From: Rebecca billardiae RCC1528 | Taxonomy: Eukaryota; Protista; Haptophyta | Direction of reading: 5' to 3' | Length of the DNA: 64,000 nucleotides | NCBI GenBank assembly: GCA_965240325.2 | Contig: OZ251235.1 | Coordinates: 1,674,001 to 1,738,000 of the forward strand | Shown here: piece after piece, positions 28,616-40,693 of the stretch | Position numbering within the stretch: position 1 is the stretch's first letter | Layout: each line of letters begins with the position of its first letter | The notes under the pieces: model-generated | Databases searched by the model: none | The model's input: only the letters and a program-made list of their open reading frames with translations | Told to the model about the DNA's origin: nothing | Program-made: the position numbers and the translations under genes

Positions 28616-28760
28616 GCCGGCCAGCTTGTGCGTGGCACACCGGCTGGCGCGCGGCGTCGCCCGGCGGCGGCCCGGCGGGCGTGCGCAGTGGACGTGGTAG
28701 GAAGAGTCGAGGCCGCGTCGCTGGCGAGTTGCGACGACGCCGCAACGCTTGGCGGGCGGT

Positions 28761-28922
28761 CCGGACCAATTCTATGATTTAAAGACACAGGCACGAGGGC
28801 GCAGCTCTCCTGATTCGTCTGTAGTGGTACAGTTTACTAAGAATAAGAGACGCACACAGCTCAGGCAGGCGAGATTGACGCCCGCCAACTGTCACCGCCC
28901 ATGAAGTACTGGTCGAAGCTTG
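28761..28922 (-). mobile_element. 83-bp 3' fragment of LINE family A, interrupted by a 75-bp family-B 3' fragment (28831-28905)
   Basis: 28761-28830 plus 28910-28922 equals the reverse complement of 40494-40576. The insert is identical to ~58524-58598 and is flanked by GTAC on both sides. Confidence 0.9.
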
Positions 28923-31463: not shown

Positions 31464-31917
31464 GCTGGACCTGGATGTCGGCGTCATCACAATCTCAAAT
31501 CCGGAGTTTTCCGGTCGAGCTGGTCCCCAACCTCGGTCCTTTCCACGATGGAACACGCCTTCCCCAGGCTCTACGACGACGTCTCTCTCCAGCGGACCCT
31601 TAGGGGCCTCGCGTGGAACGCATCAAACAACGCACCACTTACGCAAACGCAGCGCATAATCCGCATCAATAGGGTGTTCACGCCCAGCGCGCATCTCTCG
31701 CGAAAACAAGCACGAGAACAGCACCGCTACCGCAACATGAAACGCACTTCGACAGCACCTCTTGGCCCTCGGGCGCAAGCGCACACATCGGCAACGAGAT
31801 CTCGGCAGAGAGGAGCGGTGAGACAGCATTACCAGAAGCACCCCCCCCTCCCAGCGAACAGCGCACCTCAACACACATGCGCCCTCCCAACAGGAGCAGC
31901 AACTCCAGACCAACCAC

Positions 31918-33117
31918 GTGCCCGACACCGACCCGCCGCCAGAGGACGACCTTCCAGGCGCAGAGGGAGAGCGATGGGTGCTAGTGCGCAGCGGCTCCCG
32001 GCACGACACGGTGCGTCGCACACACATACCCCCCGCGACATGCCCCGCCGTCTCTCCCATTGGGGACTTAGCCGCGCCGGGCGAGCGTAAATCGCGCGTG
32101 GGCGGCCGTTTCGCGCCATTAGCGGCTTTTGCGCCAGAAACGCTCACCGCTAACCCGGACGGGCCGGCGAAATGCGCGGACGAAAGTCCGGAGCACCGGG
32201 CGCGCGCGCCGGATTTGCCGGGCCGGGCGGAGGCGAGGCGTAAAAACCCACTGCCGGTCGCGGGCGTCGCCAGAACGACGATGGCTGCGACGCAACCGCG
32301 ACGCCCTGCGCCCGAGGCACTGGCCCGCGGAATGGCTGGCTCGACCGACGGGCCTACCGAGCAGGCGGGGACCGTGCGGCCGCGAGAGATGGGGATGGAG
32401 AGAGCGCAACCGCAGGCGCAGCGGCAGCGCGTAGACGGCCAGCACGCTGGCGGCTCGACGGAAGATGCGCCGCGCGGGGCGGTGAAGCTCGAGGACGCTG
32501 TGAACAGGAACAACCGCTCAAAGCCCCCCGGGACATGGCAGGCAGCTGCCCGGGGTCCCAGCTGTCTGAAAGTGCCGAACCGGCCCAGCAGTACCAGGAC
32601 AGCTGGGAACTACTGCCCTGGCTGGACGCAGCCCCGCAAACACACCCGTGCGCTCAGGTTCGTACTAATGTGCAGCACCAGAGCACGTTCACGCACCTGC
32701 CCTGCGCATCTGCGACGGGCCGGACGACTGCGAAAAGGCAGCACTAGTAGTAGTAGGAGGAAGAGTAGGAGGAAGACTAGCAGGCATCGAAATCGTCACA
32801 TCGCCCAAGCCCGGCCGGCACCAGGTGCATCGGTCGATCCATCAAGATTGCCCAGGCAGCGGCCTAAGGGCAACACAGCACCACCAACAGCAAGGCATGT
32901 GCCACTGCGCCGCACTATGTCCTACCACCGGACAGCACTGCCGGTAACCAGGCGTACAGTGCTGGCCTATGGGCGCAAGCTTCTGCAGCACACCGCCAGC
33001 AGGGTAGCAGTGCTCTCACAGCCCAGCAGACCAGGCCACGCGGACGCGCATTGCGCCCAGCCCCCATACCACAACAGTGATCGGCAGCAGCCCACACCCC
33101 GACCGGTGCCAAAATGA
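31918..33117 (+). CDS. Possible LINE ORF1 (no recognisable domain; may be frameshifted or 5'-truncated)
   Basis: Open frame whose TGA overlaps the ORF2 ATG (ATGA at 33114-33117). Confidence 0.35.
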   Translation: MPDTDPPPEDDLPGAEGERWVLVRSGSRHDTVRRTHIPPATCPAVSPIGDLAAPGERKSRVGGRFAPLAAFAPETLTANPDGPAKCADESPEHRARAPDLPGRAEARRKNPLPVAGVARTTMAATQPRRPAPEALARGMAGSTDGPTEQAGTVRPREMGMERAQPQAQRQRVDGQHAGGSTEDAPRGAVKLEDAVNRNNRSKPPGTWQAAARGPSCLKVPNRPSSTRTAGNYCPGWTQPRKHTRALRFVLMCSTRARSRTCPAHLRRAGRLRKGSTSSSRRKSRRKTSRHRNRHIAQARPAPGASVDPSRLPRQRPKGNTAPPTARHVPLRRTMSYHRTALPVTRRTVLAYGRKLLQHTASRVAVLSQPSRPGHADAHCAQPPYHNSDRQQPTPRPVPK

Positions 33118-36100
33118 TTCAGGGGCATCGCCAGGCTGGCACTGCCAGGCAGACAAGTGAGCAGGCTGCAGCGGGAAGGCCACAGGCGAGGGGCTCAGGC
33201 AACAGGGCTGAGGAACGTTCGCTCACAATCGCCTGTGGGAACGTAGGGGGCATGGCAGGCTTGACACGCAGGGCAAGACTGCAGAGCATCCTGGACACCA
33301 AGCGCTGGGACATCGTTCTGCTCCAAGAGACCGCACTCACTAGAGACAAAGCCACTCAGGACATCCTTAGTGGCTATACGACCTACCACGACCCAATGCC
33401 CCCCAACTCGTGCTCAGGCAGAGGAGTGGCAATAGCAGTGCGGAAGGATGGCAGGCTGCCTCTCTCCAGGCTGGAGGTGACCCGAAGCGGCACTGAAGGC
33501 GGCCAGGACACTGCCGGATACATGCTCCAGGGGCGCCTGGTCTTCACCACCGCCAGGGGTACCAGCTTTGTGGTGGAGGCCACATCCTTCTACATCCCCC
33601 CTCACAGTAACCGCAACAGAGCAACTATACTGCCATGGGTAACAGAAGTCCTCCGCACGGGCACCCCGCTACACACGGGCCGACAAGATCTCCTCAGGCT
33701 TGCAGGAGGGGACGCCAATGGCACTTGGGAGGTCGGCGAGGCACTTAGGCGGCTCGACACAACACGCGCGTTCACCGCTCACCGACCAGGGGATTTCAAA
33801 GCGGCCATGGAGACAGTGACTGACCTTCACAACATGAAACCAACCGGCAGTTTCAACCCTGCCACCGAATACACCCACTCGAGTGGCAACACCCTGGCCC
33901 GACTGGACTACATATTCACCAACATGGCAGAGCTAACGCAACACTTTTGGCACTCGGACCCTCTCCTGGAGGACGCATGCATCCCTGCGCTCCCCAACGG
34001 GGACGGGAGCACCCACCATTTTATCCAGGGTAGAATCCCACTGCACAAGCTGCGGGGGGCCACCAGGCCTGTGGTCCACGAGCTCTACAGGCCATACAGG
34101 TTCTACATAAACCTGGCACACGGAGAGACGGTCAAGGAACTCAAAGCCGCATTATCCGACCCCGTAGAGAGCGACATCAGGCGGCTGGACGACGTCCACA
34201 CCCATGCACACCTGTTCGCAGCCCCAGTTGCGACGATTACTGCAGCTCCGCCACAAGTGGTGAGCGACATGGAGGAAGCCCTCCCTGCCGTCCTGGAGTG
34301 GCTCGCCTCCGTAGCAACTGACAGAGTCACGTCTGCACTCGACTCCAGCCAGCAGCCACGGGAGACCACAGTAGCCCCTGGCAGGCGGGCCCCCAAAGCG
34401 ATCGCGCCGAATGCCCTCAGGGATTTCAAACTGGGGAATGCGTACCGCCGCCAGGTCGCAGTGATCACCAGGCTGCAGCAAATCCGCCCAGGTGCTAGCG
34501 AGCAGCACGGGGAAGTGCACACAGGCTTCAGGTACAGCAGCCACAGCAGGCATGGGCGACTTGCGGAGCCGGTGCGCCTGGCAAAAGCACTGGACAGTTA
34601 TGAATCGGCACTGACTACCGCAAACGCCCCCCCTGAGGGTATGCCCCAGCTGCTCGGCTTGCCTTTCCCCACCCTGGAGGCCATCTACCAGGCTGGGCCC
34701 GCCTCGACAGCACAGTGGCTGTCGGAACTGAAAGCACGACAAGCCTTGCACCAAAATGAATACGAGCTCCTGCAGCGCGAGCACGAGGACACTCTTGCCA
34801 AGGACAGGACGAGAAAAATCCAAGACGACATGCGGAGGAAATGCACCCGCCACTTTCGCAAAATGCTCTTCCCCAAATCAAACCATGCTGGATTCGAGAT
34901 GATGATGCTCAATGACCTGGACGCTGGCAGTGGGAAAATTACCTCCGACCCAAGCAAAATCAAACGATACGCAGAGGCGCACACGGCGAACAACGTGGGG
35001 ACAGCGCCGAGCTGCAGGCAGGGGCCTGCCATAGAGGATACAAATGAAGCAGTCTGGGAAGAGATCCAAAGCAGATGGACTCCGGCCCAGCGAGCGCTGG
35101 AAAGCTCCCTGCTGGACCTGGAAGGCCTGCGCTCCCTCCTGGCAAAAGCTGACTCGAACGCTGCCCCTGGTTTGGACGGGATCCAAGTATGCGCCTTGAA
35201 ACTCTTGATAAAGATCAACAAAGCCTTTGAAGGCATCTTGGTCAACATCGTCAACACAATCCTCCGCGCAGCGGCTGTACCAGCCCACCTCAAAGATGCA
35301 GAGCTTGCCTACTTCTACAAAGGCAAAGGGGACCCTCACGATCTGAACAATTATAGGGGAGTGGCACTCCAAAGCACTGTGTACAAACTGGCGGCAGCAC
35401 ACAGGGCAAGATGCATCCAGTCGATCTGTGACCAGCTGGGTCTGATCTCGCCGGAACAAGCAGCAGCGAGCAAGCACGGGCAGCCGGAGCTCCAAGTGGC
35501 GGCACTGGTGGCAGCCATGACCCATGCCAAGGCCAGTTCTGCCGAGATCCACGTCACTACATGTGATATAAGCAAGGCCTTTGACAGAGTGCCCCATGAG
35601 TCGCTGAGGAAGGCCCTTCTCCTGCACGGCTTCTCCGCCCAACTAATTGATGAACTTGACCGACTGGACGCTCACTCTGTGGCCACCACCAGGACCCCCT
35701 ATGGCCACACTGACAAAGTGCCGATACTGCGTGGGTGCAAGCAAGGCTGCCCGCTAAGTCCCATAAAATTCTGTCTCTTCATGAACATGTTCATTGCATC
35801 CTACTCAGCCAGCCACCCTGACCATGGATACTCGTTTCCAGCCGCCAGGCATGACGCTGGCGCAGGAGACTCCCTGAAGGTGCGCATCTTGGGGTACATG
35901 GACGACATAGCTTTCCTTGCAGAGTCAGAGACGGACAGCGCCGCCCAAGTGCGCGCACTGGGACTATTCCTCAGCGCTCACGGCATGGCACTCAACCCCT
36001 CGAAGTGTGTGCACGCAAAGAAAGGAAGGGGCAGAGGGGCGCACGGCGCGCCTCCTCTGCCCCCCCTCCGCGTTGAGATAGCCGGTGAGCAGGCCACTGT

Positions 36101-39100
36101 CCCCTCCATCGGACCAGACACCCACTTTGAGTACCTCGGATACGTCCTCACCCTCCACCTCGATTGGTCAAGGCACGCCGCAAAACTGGAGACAAAGCTG
36201 CGCGCGGCCTCCTGGAAAGTGGCAGTAGCGGCCAGGGACCCGGCCTGCCACACTGTGACCACAGGCACTCTCCTCCAGCATGATGTGGTCTCTGTGGCAG
36301 GCTACTACCTGGCTGCGAGCGATGTGCGCCGCTACGGCATCACAGACAAAATGCGCGCCATCGTGATGGACATCGTGTGGGGCAGAGCTGGTCTCCCGCC
36401 CTCCGCGGCCCGCATAGCAGGCAGTGGGCCAGCCCCCAGCATGGGGATAGGCCCGGAGGAGCCGAGCGCCCTGCAGGCCGGGGTGCAAGCGGCTGCCCTC
36501 CTTCGGACTGCCAACAGCCCCACACAAGTGGGCCTGCTCACCAGGACCTGCCTGGAGGCACACCGACAACAACCGGCCAACGGAACACTGGCGCCCCCTG
36601 CAGTGAGAGGCGGAATGGAGGCCCTGTCGCTCGCGCCCAGGGGCACAGAGCCATGGCTGCTGGCCTGCTCCGCAACACTGGCCAACCTGACCCTGCGAGA
36701 GGCCTGCAGGTCCCCCCTCATCCCTAGCAGGGCCTCTGATCAGGAGAGACTCGTGGAGCTGTTAGCGGACTGGGACGCGCGGGACTACGCAGCCCTGGGC
36801 GACACCCCCATGGGCACCCTGCTGCAGGCTGCAAGTGCAGGGGGAGACGGCCAGCCTAGCCTGATGGAGCGCAGCATCCTGAGCGATAATGGCACGTCCA
36901 TGGAACGCCTGCTCAACGCACAGGGCACCCCAGCTCTCAGCCATCTCACACACACTGGCAGCAGCATGGTGTGGACGGCTGTGCAGCACCACGCAGGAGC
37001 TGCGGAAGCAATGGCAGGCCTCATTGTCCGCACTGCGGTAAAACTGGCCACGAGCCCCGCAAATTTCCTGTACACCGCCCATCTGCAGGAAGCCAGAACG
37101 GCCGCCCATGAGGCAGATGTGCCCACTGCACCAGCAGACGTGACCCAGGCAGCAGCCACCGTCACAGCGGGGGTAGATGGGTCGTACAAGCCAGACACAG
37201 CCACAGGGGCCGCTGGGGCCGCCTACATTGTACATGCCCGTGGCGCAGGCCGGCTGCGAGACCAGGAGTGCGTGCGCCTGGCAAGTGCCACATACCACGG
37301 GCAGCAGACTGCAGCCAACTCGGAGGTGGCATCTGCCACACTCCTCACCAAACTCCTGGCTGGCCTACCAGGTAGCACCATTCATGTCAGCTGGGACTGC
37401 GACGATGCACTCAAGCACCTCCTCTGGGCCAGGCCAGCGTTGGACTCCGCAGCAGGGGGCCAGGCAGCCCAGCCAAATACCACCCGCCCCCCAGGCTGGG
37501 AGCCCAGACTGAGCAAGAATCAGGCCCACAACCCGCACATGTCCAGGCTCCTGCATGTGATTGACGAGTGCTCTCGCGGCACCACCTGGATGTACTACCC
37601 CCAAATGAGCGGCCACTCACGCGGAAGGGGTGGACCATCACTGGACGATATGGTGCGCGAAATTCTCCAGCCGGAACCGGACGCGTCGGGCGGCACCTAC
37701 ACAGTGCCCCCTCCCCAGCTGGCATCGCTGCGCAGAGCCACCAGGGCCTTCGTGGGCACCGAACCTTCCTCCGAAGACGTGGACCGCACTGTATGCAACC
37801 TGTGTGCGGACTGGGCAGCCAAGCGAGTGGCTGTAGATGGCATGGACCCATCACACATGCTAGGAAAGAACGTCTGGCTCCCTGCAGCATATGGGCTGGT
37901 GGACACTGCAGGGGCTCTCCTGCAGTCAGGGCCCCTCCCTGTCAGGAGGCTGGTAATAGAGCGCGCCCGCAGAGCAGCCCTGGAGGCGCGCCTGGATCCC
38001 ACCCCTGGCAACGACGAGTCCCCCGAACAGGCGGCAGAGAGGCAGCGCAGGAGCGCCAAGTACGCCATCAAGATGGGGGATGACTCCCTACACACCCAGG
38101 AATCCACCCTCTCGCTGCGGAACCAGTTCACCAAGCCAGAGCGCCTCACCAAGTTCGTCCTCAGGTGCTGCGTCGGGGCGCTGGAGTATAATCAAGATGC
38201 TGCAGGGGCCAACCCAGGATTGGATGCAGTCCCATATAGCCAGCAATGGCCGGACTGCACGCTGGGCACCGACTGTCTGTTCTGCCTCGAGGCAGGATCG
38301 GACGCCCCTGGGCCGGACTCTGCCACGCACGTCTTCTGTGACTGCCCCCACGCCGACGCCAGGAGCATGGCACAGCATAGCATCATCCGGATGCTTGACA
38401 AGCGCACTGGCGGCAGGATGCCGATGCAAGACAGGCAAGACCTGGCAGAGCAGGCTACAGCCCACCGGCACTACTATGCGGGCCAGATCCCCAAGGCAGT
38501 AGTGGCAGCCGCCCAGGAGAGCGCAAAACAGTACCCCTGGCGGACCGCGCGGGACGGGGGAGACAGTAACAGCGCCTCTGCCGATGCAGACCAGTCAGAC
38601 GAGCAGGATGGCCAGCCAGCCGGGCGGGACGGCAGCTACAAGGTGGGAAGCTTACACTCTACCATCGTCAGCGTCACCACCCACATCCACCACAAGCGCC
38701 TCGAGCTAGCTACAGCTGGGACGGAGGGCCGCCAGCGCCGGTACGACCTCGCGCACTTCCTCACCGCTCTCCGCCGCTGCCGCCTCACAGGGGGAGCGAG
38801 CCCCAGAGATGGGCAGACCCAGGGATCGTCCGCCAGCGGCCCAAGACTCACACCCTCCCCTGACCGAACACAGGGCCCCCGACCCCCATCAAGCAGCCAG
38901 GAGGGCCCAGCAGGGGGGCGCCAGCCCCCGGCCGGCAGCAGGGCCCCTCCACCCCCTGGCCCACTGGCCCAGCAGGAACCTGGCCAACAGGCCCTCAATG
39001 CCTACTATGCAGCAGCTGAACTGCAGGATGCTGACGTCGATGGCACTGGTGCCAACTGCGGGTTCCTTGCGGTACTGGGCGTCACCCGCGCAGGGGCCCG

Positions 39101-39593
39101 CGAAGACCCAGCAGGGGCAACCAGGAGCGCCCAGGCACTGAGGCAAGCCACCGTACAGCACGCCCTGTCCCTGAGTGCGCAGCACCAGGGGGTCCTGGCG
39201 GCCGCAGTGGCCCTCCAGCCGGCCCACCTCGAGCCAGATGGGAGCGCACAGAGGGCAGCAGCAGCGGCTGCCACCCTGGGCACGGTTCGAGAGGCTGGCA
39301 CCCCGTTGGCAGATGCACTCCTCCCCTGTGTGGCAGCAGGGGCGAACACCACAGTCGTCCTGGTCACCAGAGACCCTCACACAGGCGCCCCTCTTCGTAT
39401 GGTCCAGGTCTTCCACAGCCCAGGCTCCCCCCAGTACAACCGGCACGACCCGCTGCACATTGAGGTGCTACCCTGGCCCCAAGTGGCCACCAGGCTGGCA
39501 GCGGGCGCACTCGGACAGACCAGGGTCATCTCTCACTGGAGAGGCCATTACAGGACCACAGTCCCAAGGGCACTGCCAGGTCAGGCCCACTGA
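33114..39593 (+). CDS. LINE ORF2: APE endonuclease, reverse transcriptase, RNase H, CCHC finger and OTU-like protease
   Basis: GNVGG/LLQET/GGDAN/RLDYIF (APE); APGLDGI, DISKAFDRV, GCKQGCPLSP, YMDD, EYLG (RT); VDGS/NSEV/WDC/SGHS/CADWAAK (RNase H); CLFC..HVFCDC; VDGTGANCGF...GHY (OTU). Confidence 0.93.
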   Translation: MIQGHRQAGTARQTSEQAAAGRPQARGSGNRAEERSLTIACGNVGGMAGLTRRARLQSILDTKRWDIVLLQETALTRDKATQDILSGYTTYHDPMPPNSCSGRGVAIAVRKDGRLPLSRLEVTRSGTEGGQDTAGYMLQGRLVFTTARGTSFVVEATSFYIPPHSNRNRATILPWVTEVLRTGTPLHTGRQDLLRLAGGDANGTWEVGEALRRLDTTRAFTAHRPGDFKAAMETVTDLHNMKPTGSFNPATEYTHSSGNTLARLDYIFTNMAELTQHFWHSDPLLEDACIPALPNGDGSTHHFIQGRIPLHKLRGATRPVVHELYRPYRFYINLAHGETVKELKAALSDPVESDIRRLDDVHTHAHLFAAPVATITAAPPQVVSDMEEALPAVLEWLASVATDRVTSALDSSQQPRETTVAPGRRAPKAIAPNALRDFKLGNAYRRQVAVITRLQQIRPGASEQHGEVHTGFRYSSHSRHGRLAEPVRLAKALDSYESALTTANAPPEGMPQLLGLPFPTLEAIYQAGPASTAQWLSELKARQALHQNEYELLQREHEDTLAKDRTRKIQDDMRRKCTRHFRKMLFPKSNHAGFEMMMLNDLDAGSGKITSDPSKIKRYAEAHTANNVGTAPSCRQGPAIEDTNEAVWEEIQSRWTPAQRALESSLLDLEGLRSLLAKADSNAAPGLDGIQVCALKLLIKINKAFEGILVNIVNTILRAAAVPAHLKDAELAYFYKGKGDPHDLNNYRGVALQSTVYKLAAAHRARCIQSICDQLGLISPEQAAASKHGQPELQVAALVAAMTHAKASSAEIHVTTCDISKAFDRVPHESLRKALLLHGFSAQLIDELDRLDAHSVATTRTPYGHTDKVPILRGCKQGCPLSPIKFCLFMNMFIASYSASHPDHGYSFPAARHDAGAGDSLKVRILGYMDDIAFLAESETDSAAQVRALGLFLSAHGMALNPSKCVHAKKGRGRGAHGAPPLPPLRVEIAGEQATVPSIGPDTHFEYLGYVLTLHLDWSRHAAKLETKLRAASWKVAVAARDPACHTVTTGTLLQHDVVSVAGYYLAASDVRRYGITDKMRAIVMDIVWGRAGLPPSAARIAGSGPAPSMGIGPEEPSALQAGVQAAALLRTANSPTQVGLLTRTCLEAHRQQPANGTLAPPAVRGGMEALSLAPRGTEPWLLACSATLANLTLREACRSPLIPSRASDQERLVELLADWDARDYAALGDTPMGTLLQAASAGGDGQPSLMERSILSDNGTSMERLLNAQGTPALSHLTHTGSSMVWTAVQHHAGAAEAMAGLIVRTAVKLATSPANFLYTAHLQEARTAAHEADVPTAPADVTQAAATVTAGVDGSYKPDTATGAAGAAYIVHARGAGRLRDQECVRLASATYHGQQTAANSEVASATLLTKLLAGLPGSTIHVSWDCDDALKHLLWARPALDSAAGGQAAQPNTTRPPGWEPRLSKNQAHNPHMSRLLHVIDECSRGTTWMYYPQMSGHSRGRGGPSLDDMVREILQPEPDASGGTYTVPPPQLASLRRATRAFVGTEPSSEDVDRTVCNLCADWAAKRVAVDGMDPSHMLGKNVWLPAAYGLVDTAGALLQSGPLPVRRLVIERARRAALEARLDPTPGNDESPEQAAERQRRSAKYAIKMGDDSLHTQESTLSLRNQFTKPERLTKFVLRCCVGALEYNQDAAGANPGLDAVPYSQQWPDCTLGTDCLFCLEAGSDAPGPDSATHVFCDCPHADARSMAQHSIIRMLDKRTGGRMPMQDRQDLAEQATAHRHYYAGQIPKAVVAAAQESAKQYPWRTARDGGDSNSASADADQSDEQDGQPAGRDGSYKVGSLHSTIVSVTTHIHHKRLELATAGTEGRQRRYDLAHFLTALRRCRLTGGASPRDGQTQGSSASGPRLTPSPDRTQGPRPPSSSQEGPAGGRQPPAGSRAPPPPGPLAQQEPGQQALNAYYAAAELQDADVDGTGANCGFLAVLGVTRAGAREDPAGATRSAQALRQATVQHALSLSAQHQGVLAAAVALQPAHLEPDGSAQRAAAAAATLGTVREAGTPLADALLPCVAAGANTTVVLVTRDPHTGAPLRMVQVFHSPGSPQYNRHDPLHIEVLPWPQVATRLAAGALGQTRVISHWRGHYRTTVPRALPGQAH

Positions 39594-39771
39594 GGCCACG
39601 GGCCCGCAGGCAGAACTCAGGCTGGCCAGAGGCCCCTGCTGGGGAGGGTGGGGGAACTGCCCAAGCGCCGGGGGGGGGGGGGGGGGGGGGGGGGGAGGAC
39701 GAGCTCAACCAGAACCACCAGGCCCAGCAGAGACACGACCATCCCCCACAAGTACCGGAACCAGTCCCCGA

Positions 39772-40231
39772 CGGCGAGTCCAACTACTACTAACTTCGGC
39801 GAGTCCAACTACTACAAACTTCGGCGAGTCCAACTACTACTAACTTCGGCGAGTCCAACTACTACTAACTTCGGCGAGTCCAACTACTACTAACTTCGGC
39901 GAGTCCAACTACTACTAACCTCGGTGAGTCCAACTACTACTACTAACTTCGGCGAGTCCAACTACTACTAACTTCGGCGAGTCCAACTACTACTAACTTC
40001 GGCGAGTCCAACTACTACTAACTTCGGCGAGTCCAACTACGACTACTAACTTCGGCGAGTCCAACTACTACTAACTTCGGCGAGTCCAACTACTACTAAC
40101 TTCGGCGAGTCCAACTACTACTAACTCAGGCGAGTCCAACTACTACTAACTTCGGCGAGTCCAACTACTACCAACTTCGGCGAGTCCAACTACTACTAAC
40201 TCAGGCGAGTCCAACTACTATTAACTTCGGC
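39772..40231 (+). repeat. Tandem array, 18 x 25 bp (CGGCGAGTCCAACTACTACTAACTT), in the LINE 3' UTR
   Basis: Counted directly. Two units carry an extra trinucleotide and there are no unique spacers. Confidence 0.97.
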
Positions 40232-40693
40232 CACAACATCACCCACCAGCTGCTGACCAAGAACAGGCTACACCATCGTCCACCATGACCTGCCACTGAC
40301 CAAGTAGGCGACGACATCATCCGCACCAGCTGCTGACCAAGTAGGGGACGGCCTGGCCGACGCCAACATGCTCACTCGCCTTTGATTTCGTACCCATGCA
40401 CTTCCTGGTGGGCCTGACGACGTCCGGACGACGACAACAACGACGTCCGCCATGGGGACCAACATCAACGCGCTCACACCACTGCCACTGCTGCAAGCTT
40501 CGACCAGTACCACTACAGACGAATCAGGAGAGCTGCGCCCTCGTGCCTGTGTCTTTAAATCATAGAATTGGTCCGGGTTTTTCCGAACCTGTAACGACGG
40601 GAGCGAGTTTCCTGTAAGTCGTTATCGCGGCACCTCGCGTGCGCCGTGCCAGCTGCACGCTTGGCTGGTTCCCCTCATCGTCTGTTTCGCGGG

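What the first reader, a model, noticed from the sequence alone, without database searches (positions are those of the whole stretch)
33114..39593. Intact LINE ORF2 with RNase H and a C-terminal OTU-like cysteine protease
Seen: one 2159-aa ORF with APE, RT, a full D-E-D-H-D RNase H and a CCHC finger. After a proline-rich linker come DVDGTGANCGFLAV (~39033-39075) and HWRGHYRT (~39534-39557), which match the OTU Cys and His boxes. Protease domains are known in some non-LTR elements (e.g. Ulp1 in NeSL), but a C-terminal OTU on an APE+RNase H element is unusual. Inference: a deubiquitinase that protects ORF2p or counters ubiquitin-dependent silencing, or a self-processing protease.
Basis: partly seen in the sequence, partly recalled or inferred. 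Interest (0 to 1): 0.8.

Follow-up and report, generated by a model that had tools for sequence, protein, structure and literature searches.

The report
LINE retrotransposon carrying an OTU deubiquitinase
A young, multi-copy jumping gene (a LINE) encodes one giant protein that ends in a very divergent OTU-type ubiquitin-cleaving protease domain, a rare accessory module for this class of element that probably shields the element's machinery from ubiquitin-dependent destruction.

Summary
Window 33114-39593 (+) is an intact 2159-aa ORF inside a 9.0-kb non-LTR retrotransposon (about 31535-40574). The 72-Mb genome holds at least six full-length copies with intact ORFs and many 5'-truncated ones. 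Pfam confirms APE and RT. The CCHC knuckle is conserved in relatives. The RNase H is probable but supported only indirectly.

The C-terminal 200 aa match no Pfam or PDB sequence. AlphaFold2 models them well (pLDDT 78, pTM 0.78), and every strong structural match is an OTU deubiquitinase: OTUD3 Z 12.3, with the top 32 of 48,161 chains all OTU-type. Josephin scores Z 2.5. Cys1982 and His2145 are invariant in the only two relatives found among 1.84 billion protein representatives, both 40% identical with the same architecture.

A complex prediction with the genome's own ubiquitin passes its controls (0.68 against 0.02). It puts the ubiquitin tail on Cys1982/His2145.

No restriction-like endonuclease is recognisable, so this is not a Dualen by definition. 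Deubiquitinase domains on LINE proteins are already reported: Josephin-like in Dualen, and an N-terminal OTU in a dinoflagellate ORF2p. I therefore call it a new variant of a known kind. The biological role is inferred, not shown. This scan had already flagged the same family on another piece of this genome (s1-371932).

The parts
31535..40574 (+). Whole non-LTR retrotransposon copy (about 9.0 kb)
   Evidence: Comparison with five other full-length copies: similarity starts at 31533-31545 and ends at 40573-40575.
31535..33113 (+). 5' region, either UTR or an unverified ORF1. It holds a 399-codon open frame (31918-33117) whose stop overlaps the ORF2 start (ATGA).
   Evidence: No Pfam hit and no similarity to the N-terminal parts of sister families.
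33114..39593 (+). ORF2, 2159 aa, intact
   Evidence: Six copies have intact 2159-2160-aa ORFs, and overall dN/dS is about 0.38.
33240..33923 (+). APE-type endonuclease (aa 43-270)
   Evidence: Pfam PF03372, E 5.6e-6, above the cut-off.
35343..36146 (+). Reverse transcriptase (aa 744-1011; YMDD at aa 928-931)
   Evidence: Pfam PF00078, E 1.9e-23. PDB: R2 proteins E 1.3e-10, L1 ORF2p E 2e-3.
37167..37829 (+). Probable divergent RNase H with long insertions (aa 1352-1572; D1355, E1404, D1428, H1501, D1566)
   Evidence: Atlas features: 24 of 30 hits PF00075 at 0.92. hhalign E 6e-4 over the first three catalytic residues. No Pfam or PDB hit. The AF2 model failed.
38274..38351 (+). CCHC zinc knuckle (aa 1721-1746)
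   Evidence: Conserved in P0002 and P0003.
38352..38798 (+). Conserved region after the knuckle (aa 1747-1895), predicted helical at low confidence. No restriction-like endonuclease motif. Ends in RLTGG (aa 1890-1894).
   Evidence: Alignments, low-confidence model, no PDB hit.
38799..38975 (+). Pro/Gly/Gln/Ser-rich linker (aa 1896-1954)
   Evidence: Composition. Low-complexity linkers sit at the same place in L047 and L048.
38976..39572 (+). OTU-fold cysteine protease / deubiquitinase domain (aa 1955-2153)
   Evidence: AF2 pLDDT 78.4, pTM 0.78. Foldseek top 50 are all OTU. VIA-align Z 12.3 to OTUD3. The nearest Atlas models are OTU proteins. Ubiquitin complex scores 0.68 against 0.02 for the best control.
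39057..39059 (+). Codon of the proposed catalytic Cys1982 (model residue 32, N-terminus of helix 32-38)
   Evidence: Invariant in relatives and in every genomic copy that covers it. Contacts the ubiquitin tail in the predicted complex.
39546..39548 (+). Codon of the proposed catalytic His2145 (model residue 195, start of strand 195-201)
39594..40574 (+). 3' UTR: G26 run (39670-39695), 25-bp tandem array of 18 copies (39772-40231), fixed terminus without poly(A)

Best explanation
The element is a young, probably still active APE-type LINE. Its single giant protein reads APE, RT, probable RNase H, CCHC knuckle, flexible Pro-rich linker, then a highly divergent but catalytically equipped OTU-fold ubiquitin isopeptidase. 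Shown in silico: the OTU fold, the conserved Cys1982/His2145 pair at the canonical structural positions, and a predicted S1-type ubiquitin complex with the ubiquitin C-terminal tail on that pair. Inferred: the domain is an active deubiquitinase. It stays tethered to ORF2p by the linker and works in cis on the element's own translating or assembling RNP. There it would strip ubiquitin from ORF2p itself and/or from the ribosome that makes it, so the very long protein and its RNA escape ubiquitin-dependent degradation or quality control long enough to retrotranspose.
For: The ORF is intact in six copies and overall dN/dS is about 0.38, so the coding capacity is under selection. The AF2 model has pLDDT 78.4 and pTM 0.78. 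Foldseek's top 50 PDB hits are all OTU deubiquitinases. An unbiased VIA-align search of 48,161 chains gives OTU-type chains as its top 32; the best is OTUD3 with Z 12.3, rmsd 3.7 and 138 of 141 residues aligned, and Josephin scores only Z 2.5. The nearest Atlas shapes are OTU proteins, several from Chlorophyta, and the language-model feature search puts an OTU cluster first at 0.93. Cys and His are invariant in two 40%-identical relatives that share the RNase H motif, CCHC, linker, OTU and stop architecture. In the complex prediction with the genome's own ubiquitin the score is 0.68 and the best of 3 controls is 0.02. That mark was reached by 51 of 78 solved complexes and 2 of 108 mismatched pairs. 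The runs agree in at least 95% of contacts and the partner's pLDDT is at least 89. Ubiquitin residues 70-76 touch OTU residues 29-33 and 191-196. The best structural neighbours (OTUD3, Otu2 on the Ub-40S, OTUD1) are, from my own knowledge, ribosome-directed deubiquitinases.
Against: There is no sequence-level membership in OTU. Pfam PF02338 gives no hit, the PDB profile search gives none, and hhalign against host OTU domains gives E 0.12. The usual acidic or Asn third catalytic residue at His+2 is an invariant Arg here, so the catalytic geometry is unproven. All fold evidence comes from predictors trained on known OTU-ubiquitin structures, so the complex pass may reflect memory of those. Within-family dN/dS for the OTU part alone is uninformative (3 synonymous, 6 non-synonymous changes). 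No RNA run holding the element was found, so expression is unshown. Nothing identifies the substrate.
Confidence: 0.6

Rival explanations
1. Self-processing protease. Like the OTU-type proteases of tymoviruses and arteriviruses, the domain would cut the ORF2 polyprotein at an LxGG-like site and release itself or other modules.
For: Viral OTU-like processing proteases appear among the weaker structural matches: TYMV proteinase Z 4.5 and PRRSV PLP2 Z 2.4. An RLTGG|A site lies at aa 1890-1895 just before the linker, and VRGG|M lies at aa 1164-1168. A sister family carries a ubiquitin-like domain ending RLRGG directly before its APE, so ubiquitin-type cleavage is used in this clade.
Against: The RLTGG site is absent at the aligned position in both OTU-bearing relatives. 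The window element has no ubiquitin-like domain. The best structural matches are cellular deubiquitinases, not the viral processing enzymes.
Confidence: 0.12
2. A deubiquitinase aimed at host factors rather than at the element's own RNP. It would remove ubiquitin from chromatin, PCNA or DNA-repair proteins at the integration nick, or from components of a ubiquitin-dependent silencing pathway.
For: The fold and ubiquitin-binding evidence is the same as for the best explanation. The authors who described OTU and Ulp1 domains in Helitron and Ginger1 DNA transposons proposed action on DNA-repair signalling (PMC2836005). The domain is tethered to the enzyme that sits on the target DNA.
Against: There is no evidence for any particular target. 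Nothing distinguishes this reading from cis-protection with the present data.
Confidence: 0.15
3. A catalytically dead OTU-like module kept as a ubiquitin-binding or scaffolding domain.
For: The residue at His+2 is an invariant Arg rather than Asp or Asn. The Cys loop is three residues longer than the canonical DGNC. Sequence divergence from all known OTUs is extreme.
Against: Cys and His are strictly retained in three lineages at 40% identity, which is not expected for a pseudo-enzyme. The predicted ubiquitin tail runs into the Cys/His pair. Cys-His dyads suffice in many papain-like enzymes (own knowledge).
Confidence: 0.08
4. Not a real OTU. Structure predictors would have produced the fold from two short motifs in an Ala-rich sequence.
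For: The alignment behind the AF2 model has only three sequences. No sequence method reaches significance.
Against: Two predictors agree: AF2 at pLDDT 78 and ESMFold2 without any alignment at pLDDT 85-86. 138 of 141 OTUD3 residues align. The feature search, which uses no structure, also ranks OTU first. The longer region folded with the same shallow depth got only pLDDT 38.6, so low depth does not automatically give confident folds.
Confidence: 0.05

Closest known systems
Dualen/RandI LINEs of Chlamydomonas (Kojima & Fujiwara 2005, as cited in PMC8557442 and PMC9977147)
   Same: A GC-rich-genome LINE with APE, RT, RNase H, a CCHC knuckle and an added deubiquitinase-class cysteine protease. It has no poly(A) tail. 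Its RT is nearer to R2-type than to L1-type RTs in PDB, which fits an early-branching APE lineage.
   Different: No restriction-like endonuclease is recognisable after the knuckle. The protease is OTU-fold (Z 12.3), not Josephin-like (Z 2.5). The 3' end is a fixed sequence rather than an (ATT)n-type repeat (PMC3747384). I could not obtain Dualen sequences, so direct homology was not tested.
ORF2p-deubiquitinase fusions reported in a 2026 preprint (PMC13405545): N-terminal Josephin in Haematococcus lacustris ORF2p, N-terminal OTU in a Symbiodinium necroappetens ORF2p
   Same: A LINE ORF2 protein fused to a deubiquitinase domain, including an OTU.
   Different: Here the OTU is C-terminal, after RNase H, the CCHC knuckle and a Pro-rich linker. 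No 2A-like peptide is present in this family. The sequence is unrelated at the detectable level: only two relatives in 1.84 billion representatives.
OTU domains of Helitron and Ginger1 DNA transposons (PMC2836005)
   Same: An OTU cysteine protease as a C-terminal accessory domain of a transposable-element enzyme.
   Different: Those are DNA transposons and their OTUs are recognisable with pfam02338. This one is on a retrotransposon and escapes Pfam.
Ulp1-like protease of NeSL and Utopia-1_TSP LINEs (PMC4640811)
   Same: A ubiquitin-like-modifier protease fused to a LINE protein.
   Different: Ulp1 is a SUMO-protease fold and sits N-terminally on RLE-type elements. Here it is an OTU fold, C-terminal, on an APE-type element.
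Cellular OTUD3 / OTUD1 / yeast Otu2 and the nairovirus OTU proteases (PDB 4bou, 4bop, 8c83, 3phw)
   Same: They share the fold, the Cys at a helix N-terminus, the His at a strand start and the predicted ubiquitin S1 binding mode.
   Different: Only 8-17% identity. There is a helical insertion with a disordered loop (model residues 86-99), a longer Cys loop, and Arg at His+2.

Membership tests
OTU deubiquitinase superfamily | OTU fold (papain-like alpha/beta core) | tested here: met
   Foldseek's top 50 are all OTU. VIA-align gives Z 12.3 to OTUD3 with 138 of 141 residues aligned. The top 32 of 48,161 chains are OTU-type. The nearest Atlas shapes are OTU proteins.
OTU deubiquitinase superfamily | Catalytic Cys at the N-terminus of a helix, in an (D/N)-G-N-C-like box | tested here: met
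   N1981-C1982 is invariant in three lineages. Cys is model residue 32 at the start of helix 32-38. The only hhalign segment against host OTUs aligns it to the DGxC Cys, though at E 0.12. The loop is three residues longer than the canonical one.
OTU deubiquitinase superfamily | Catalytic His in a C-terminal beta-strand ('HY' box) | tested here: met
   H2145-Y2146 is invariant. It is model residue 195 at the start of strand 195-201. It contacts ubiquitin residues 73-74 in the predicted complex.
OTU deubiquitinase superfamily | Third catalytic residue (Asp/Asn, usually His+2) | tested here: not met
   His+2 is an invariant Arg.
OTU deubiquitinase superfamily | Sequence membership in Pfam PF02338 | tested here: not met
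   No hit at E up to 10. PF02338 finds 14 host genes in this genome but none of the LINE copies.
OTU deubiquitinase superfamily | Binds ubiquitin with its C-terminal tail in the active-site cleft | tested here: met
   This is a prediction only. The score is 0.68 and the best of 3 controls is 0.02; the mark was reached by 51 of 78 solved complexes and 2 of 108 mismatched pairs.
OTU deubiquitinase superfamily | Isopeptidase activity | not testable with these tools
   Needs an enzyme assay.
Non-LTR (LINE) retrotransposon, APE type | APE endonuclease N-terminal to a LINE-type RT in one ORF | tested here: met
   Pfam PF03372 and PF00078. The RT matches R2 and L1 ORF2p structures.
Non-LTR (LINE) retrotransposon, APE type | Multi-copy with a 3'-biased copy number (5' truncation) and no LTRs | tested here: met
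   31 matches to the OTU end against 7 loci with this family's APE. The copies share one 3' terminus.
Dualen/RandI | Second, restriction-like endonuclease (PD-(D/E)xK) after the CCHC knuckle | tested here: not met
   No conserved PD or (D/E)xK motif appears among three aligned lineages. The region is predicted helical, at low confidence. No PDB hit.
Dualen/RandI | Josephin-like cysteine protease | tested here: not met
   Josephin 3o65 scores Z 2.5 against OTU Z 12.3.
Dualen/RandI | Position in the RT phylogeny | not testable with these tools
   No reference RT set (Repbase) was available. The only hint is that R2 RTs score better than L1.
RNase H (type 1) | D-E-D-(H)-D catalytic residues in an RNase H fold | tested here: inconclusive
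   The first three residues align by hhalign (E 6e-4, probability 29%). The feature search favours PF00075. There is no Pfam or PDB hit. The AF2 model is unusable at pLDDT 38.6.

The most novel reading that the evidence does not exclude
This LINE clade may systematically exploit the ubiquitin and co-translational machinery. At the same boundary in front of the APE domain, one sister lineage has a ubiquitin-like domain ending RLRGG, another has an NPGP 2A-like motif, and the window family has a stop/restart. The window family, and perhaps the 2A-bearing one, adds its own OTU. The OTU's nearest structural neighbours are the ribosome-directed deubiquitinases OTUD3, Otu2 and OTUD1. The most novel reading still open is that the tethered OTU erases ubiquitin marks from stalled or collided ribosomes, evading ribosome-associated quality control while the 6.5-kb ORF is translated. 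That would be a retrotransposon-encoded antagonist of translational quality control.
Probability: 0.15. Interest if true: 0.8.

Novelty: new variant of a known kind. Interest (0 to 1): 0.55.

Why it matters
LINE proteins are normally thought of as endonuclease plus reverse transcriptase. Accessory enzymatic domains show which host pathways limit retrotransposition. Here a self-encoded deubiquitinase sits on a young family with six intact copies. That makes an experimentally tractable case for asking whether ubiquitin-dependent degradation, ribosome quality control or repair signalling restricts LINEs. The domain can be mutated at one Cys and the element's mobility or protein stability scored. 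It also adds an extremely divergent branch to the OTU superfamily, visible only by structure prediction. This suggests such domains are under-counted in transposable-element annotation.

Tried and rejected
**Sequence searches on the C-terminal domain, all negative**
- Pfam on the whole ORF and on sub-regions found nothing beyond APE and RT.
- PDB profile or sequence searches found nothing for the OTU domain, the RNase H region or the region after the CCHC knuckle.
- The word-index protein search on aa 1330-2159 found nothing. With the OTU profile it found only P0001 again.
- One metagenome-contig scan found no relative.

**Structure and profile attempts**
- The AF2 model of aa 1335-1905 (RNase H to the pre-linker region) failed at pLDDT 38.6, so neither the RNase H fold nor the absence of a restriction-like endonuclease could be settled structurally.
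- Josephin, which the literature reports for Dualen, is rejected for this domain: Z 2.5 against 12.3.
- hhalign of the LINE OTU profile against host OTU domains was not significant (E 0.12). Against the C-terminal domain of sister family B it was E 0.16.

**Tests of the self-processing idea**
- No ubiquitin-like domain or homologue of the sister families' N-terminal regions exists in the window element.
- The LxGG-like sites are not conserved in relatives.

**Selection and expression**
- dN/dS on the OTU part alone is underpowered, with 9 substitutions.
- No public run on record as RNA held the stretch. The contigs laid were short near-identical fragments from four studies and say nothing about expression.

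**Literature**
- The original Dualen paper (PMC1182223) is not held in the library, so its domain order and protease assignment are quoted second-hand.
Full report
**What is in the sequence**

The window holds one open reading frame from 33114 to 39593 on the + strand, 2159 codons from an ATG. The Cys-box motif is at aa 1974-1987 (nt 39033-39074). The His-box motif is at aa 2141-2148 (nt 39534-39557). They are preceded by a stretch (aa 1900-1960) that is 24% proline.

Pfam recognises two domains:
- An AP-type endonuclease at aa 43-270 (E 5.6e-6, above the curated cut-off).
- A reverse transcriptase at aa 744-1011 (E 1.9e-23).

Nothing else in the protein reaches Pfam, even at E 10 on sub-regions.

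**The element**

Comparison with other copies in the same 72-Mb, roughly 67% GC assembly puts the element at about 31535-40574, or 9.0 kb. Its layout is:
- A 1.6-kb 5' region with no convincing ORF1. It holds a 399-codon frame ending in an ATGA overlap with ORF2 and has no family match.
- ORF2.
- A 1-kb 3' UTR with a G26 run and an 18-copy 25-bp tandem array.
- A fixed terminus without poly(A).

Six full-length copies all carry intact 2159-2160-aa ORFs at 99.2-99.8% identity. Across them there are 40 synonymous and 45 non-synonymous differences, giving dN/dS of about 0.38. The 3' (OTU) end is found at 31 places, but the APE of this family at only 7. That is the usual 5'-truncation signature of LINEs. 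This is a young, probably active LINE family.

**The C-terminal domain**

By sequence it is almost an orphan:
- An exhaustive HMMER search of 1.84 billion representatives found only two relatives, both metagenomic and both about 40% identical.
- A profile search of the word-indexed 5.8-billion set added none.
- The PDB profile search gave nothing.

Reading the two metagenome contigs shows the open frame running to the contig start. Both have the same order: RNase H C-terminal motif, CCHC knuckle, conserved region, low-complexity Pro-rich linker, this domain, stop. In the three-way alignment the Asn-Cys of the Cys box and the His-Tyr-Arg-Thr-Thr of the His box are invariant.

AlphaFold2 on that three-sequence alignment gave pLDDT 78.4 and pTM 0.78. 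Four of the five models scored above 72. The Cys is at the N-terminus of a helix and the His at the start of a beta-strand. The structural searches agree:
- Foldseek against PDB returned only OTU deubiquitinases in its top 50 (OTUD3 E 2.9e-4, target TM 0.67).
- VIA-align on those hits gave Z 12.3 to OTUD3 (rmsd 3.7, 138 of 141 residues aligned) and 108 chains at Z of 8 or more.
- A search independent of Foldseek, against 48,161 representative chains, put OTU-type proteins in the first 32 ranks (Z 12.3 down to 4.3). The Josephin domain was at Z 2.5.
- The ESM Atlas shape search returned OTU-domain proteins, several from Chlorophyta.
- The structure-free feature search ranked an OTU cluster first at 0.93.

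I then took ubiquitin from the same genome, a 76-residue unit of a polyubiquitin gene ending LRLRGG, and asked for a complex. The score was 0.68 against a best control of 0.02. That mark was reached by 51 of 78 solved complexes and 2 of 108 mismatched pairs. The runs agreed in at least 95% of contacts and the partner's pLDDT was at least 89. The interface uses the Ile44 patch and the beta1-beta2 loop of ubiquitin. It lays ubiquitin residues 70-76 against OTU residues 29-33 (including Cys32 = Cys1982) and 191-196 (including His195 = His2145). This is the canonical S1 binding mode. Because OTU-ubiquitin complexes are well represented in PDB, the pass shows likeness rather than proving binding.

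**Caveats on the OTU call**
- Pfam PF02338 finds 14 host OTU genes in this genome but none of the LINE copies.
- hhalign of the LINE profile against three host OTU domains is not significant (E 0.12), although its single segment aligns the Cys boxes in register.
- The residue two positions after the His, usually Asp or Asn in OTUs (own knowledge), is an invariant Arg.
- Within-family substitutions in the OTU part are too few to measure selection (3 synonymous, 6 non-synonymous). The argument for constraint rests on the 40%-identity relatives.
- All genomic copies that cover them keep Cys and His. In so young a family this says little.

**The other claimed domains**

The CCHC knuckle (C1721, C1724, H1739, C1743) is conserved in P0002 and in a more distant relative, P0003.

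The RNase H is probable but not proven:
- There are no Pfam or PDB sequence hits.
- The AF2 model of aa 1335-1905 was unusable at pLDDT 38.6.
- 24 of the 30 nearest named Atlas clusters are PF00075 at 0.92.
- hhalign against RNase H domains from this genome aligns D1355, E1404 and D1428 in register (E 6e-4, probability 29%).
- H1501 and D1566, in an N-x-x-A-D-W-x-A-K motif shared with P0003, are separated by an insertion of about 60 residues.

**Classification**

In PDB the RT scores much better against R2 proteins (E 1.3e-10) than against human L1 ORF2p (E 2e-3). That fits an early-branching APE lineage.

The closest described architecture is Dualen/RandI of Chlamydomonas. It has APE, RT, RNase H, a restriction-like endonuclease and a 'Josephin-related' cysteine protease (PMC9977147 figure legend; PMC8557442). 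Two defining features were tested here and not met. No PD-(D/E)xK motif is conserved after the knuckle. The protease is OTU, not Josephin. I therefore do not file it as a Dualen. A Dualen derivative that lost the second endonuclease is not excluded, because no reference RT set or Dualen sequence was available to me.

**Relatives that inform the mechanism**

P0003 is a 3110-aa ORF on a 10.7-kb ENA contig, 33% identical over APE and RT. It ends at a true stop without any OTU. It carries a ubiquitin-like domain ending RLRGG 21 residues before its APE. The alignment covers the whole of ubiquitin, but the single-domain E-value is only about 0.06.

A second family in the same genome has ORFs of 2903-3371 aa and is 39% identical over aa 24-1888. 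It has an NPGP 2A-like motif seven residues before its APE. After an Ala/Pro-rich linker it has a C-terminal region with HGDC and GHYEPV motifs that resemble OTU boxes. That region stays unverified: no Pfam hit, no PDB hit, hhalign E 0.16.

The window family instead starts ORF2 afresh at that boundary. It has no ubiquitin-like domain.

**How it most likely works**

Shown in silico:
- A LINE ORF2 protein.
- An OTU-fold domain on a flexible linker.
- A conserved Cys/His pair.
- A ubiquitin-compatible cleft.

Inferred: an active deubiquitinase that travels with ORF2p and removes ubiquitin from nearby targets. I favour cis-protection of the element's own translating or assembling RNP, meaning ORF2p and/or ribosomal proteins. 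The domain is covalently tethered to a cis-acting protein. Its best structural neighbours, OTUD3, Otu2 on the ubiquitinated 40S and OTUD1, are ribosome-directed enzymes by my own knowledge.

The rivals are self-processing, action on host chromatin, repair or silencing factors, and a dead ubiquitin-binding module. Self-processing is weakened because the RLTGG site is not conserved. None of them is excluded.

**Novelty**

In the searchable literature I found no LINE with a C-terminal OTU. Deubiquitinase-class proteases on transposable-element proteins are nevertheless established:
- Josephin-like in Dualen.
- Ulp1 in NeSL and Utopia (PMC4640811).
- OTU in Helitrons and Ginger1 (PMC2836005).
- ORF2p with N-terminal Josephin (Haematococcus) or N-terminal OTU (Symbiodinium necroappetens), in a 2026 preprint (PMC13405545).

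This is therefore a new variant of a known kind. It is of moderate interest and is made attractive by the intact young copies.

An earlier follow-up in this scan reached the same reading on a 5'-truncated copy elsewhere in this genome (s1-371932). My tests were done independently of it.

Noticed in passing
L041:3904-4143 (protein P0003 aa 976-1055): A sister LINE family on a metagenome contig, 33% identical over APE and RT, has a ubiquitin-like domain ending RLRGG only 21 residues before its APE domain and lacks the OTU. This suggests the upstream polypeptide is released by host deubiquitinases.
   Followed up: partly
L055:4643-4654 and L056:730-1593 (G000:C12:1138000-1153000); also L057/L058 (G000:C17): A second LINE family in the same genome has ORFs of 2903-3371 aa, 39% identical to window ORF2 aa 24-1888. 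It has an NPGP 2A-like motif 7 aa before its APE. After a linker it has a C-terminal region with HGDC and GHYEPV motifs that look like OTU Cys/His boxes. Pfam, PDB and hhalign (E 0.16) do not confirm this.
   Followed up: partly
window 33114-33117: The stop of a 399-codon upstream frame (31918-33117, Arg/Pro/Ser-rich, no family match) overlaps the ORF2 start as ATGA. Whether this frame is a real ORF1 is unresolved.
   Followed up: partly
window 40545-40574 and 31520-31545: The element ends in a fixed sequence (…CATAGAATT + N + GTCC) without poly(A) or a microsatellite. Three of five copies have GGTCC just outside the 5' junction, suggesting a short target microhomology or duplication.
   Followed up: partly
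window 28758-28830 (-): A fragment of about 70 bp, 97-100% identical to the element's extreme 3' end, lies in inverted orientation 2.7 kb upstream. It is an extremely 5'-truncated copy or a footprint.
   Followed up: no
window 39670-39695 and 39772-40231: The 3' UTR holds a G26 homopolymer and an 18-copy 25-bp tandem array. The blastn alignments to the other copies break and overlap within this array.
   Followed up: no
window 38369-39599: Short, near-identical contig fragments of this stretch occur in four public runs from four studies, one labelled as a riverine metagenome. None is on record as RNA.
   Followed up: partly
window 35343-36146: The RT carries YMDD rather than the F/YADD usual in LINEs (own knowledge). 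It matches R2 structures far better than L1 ORF2p (E 1.3e-10 against 2e-3).
   Followed up: partly
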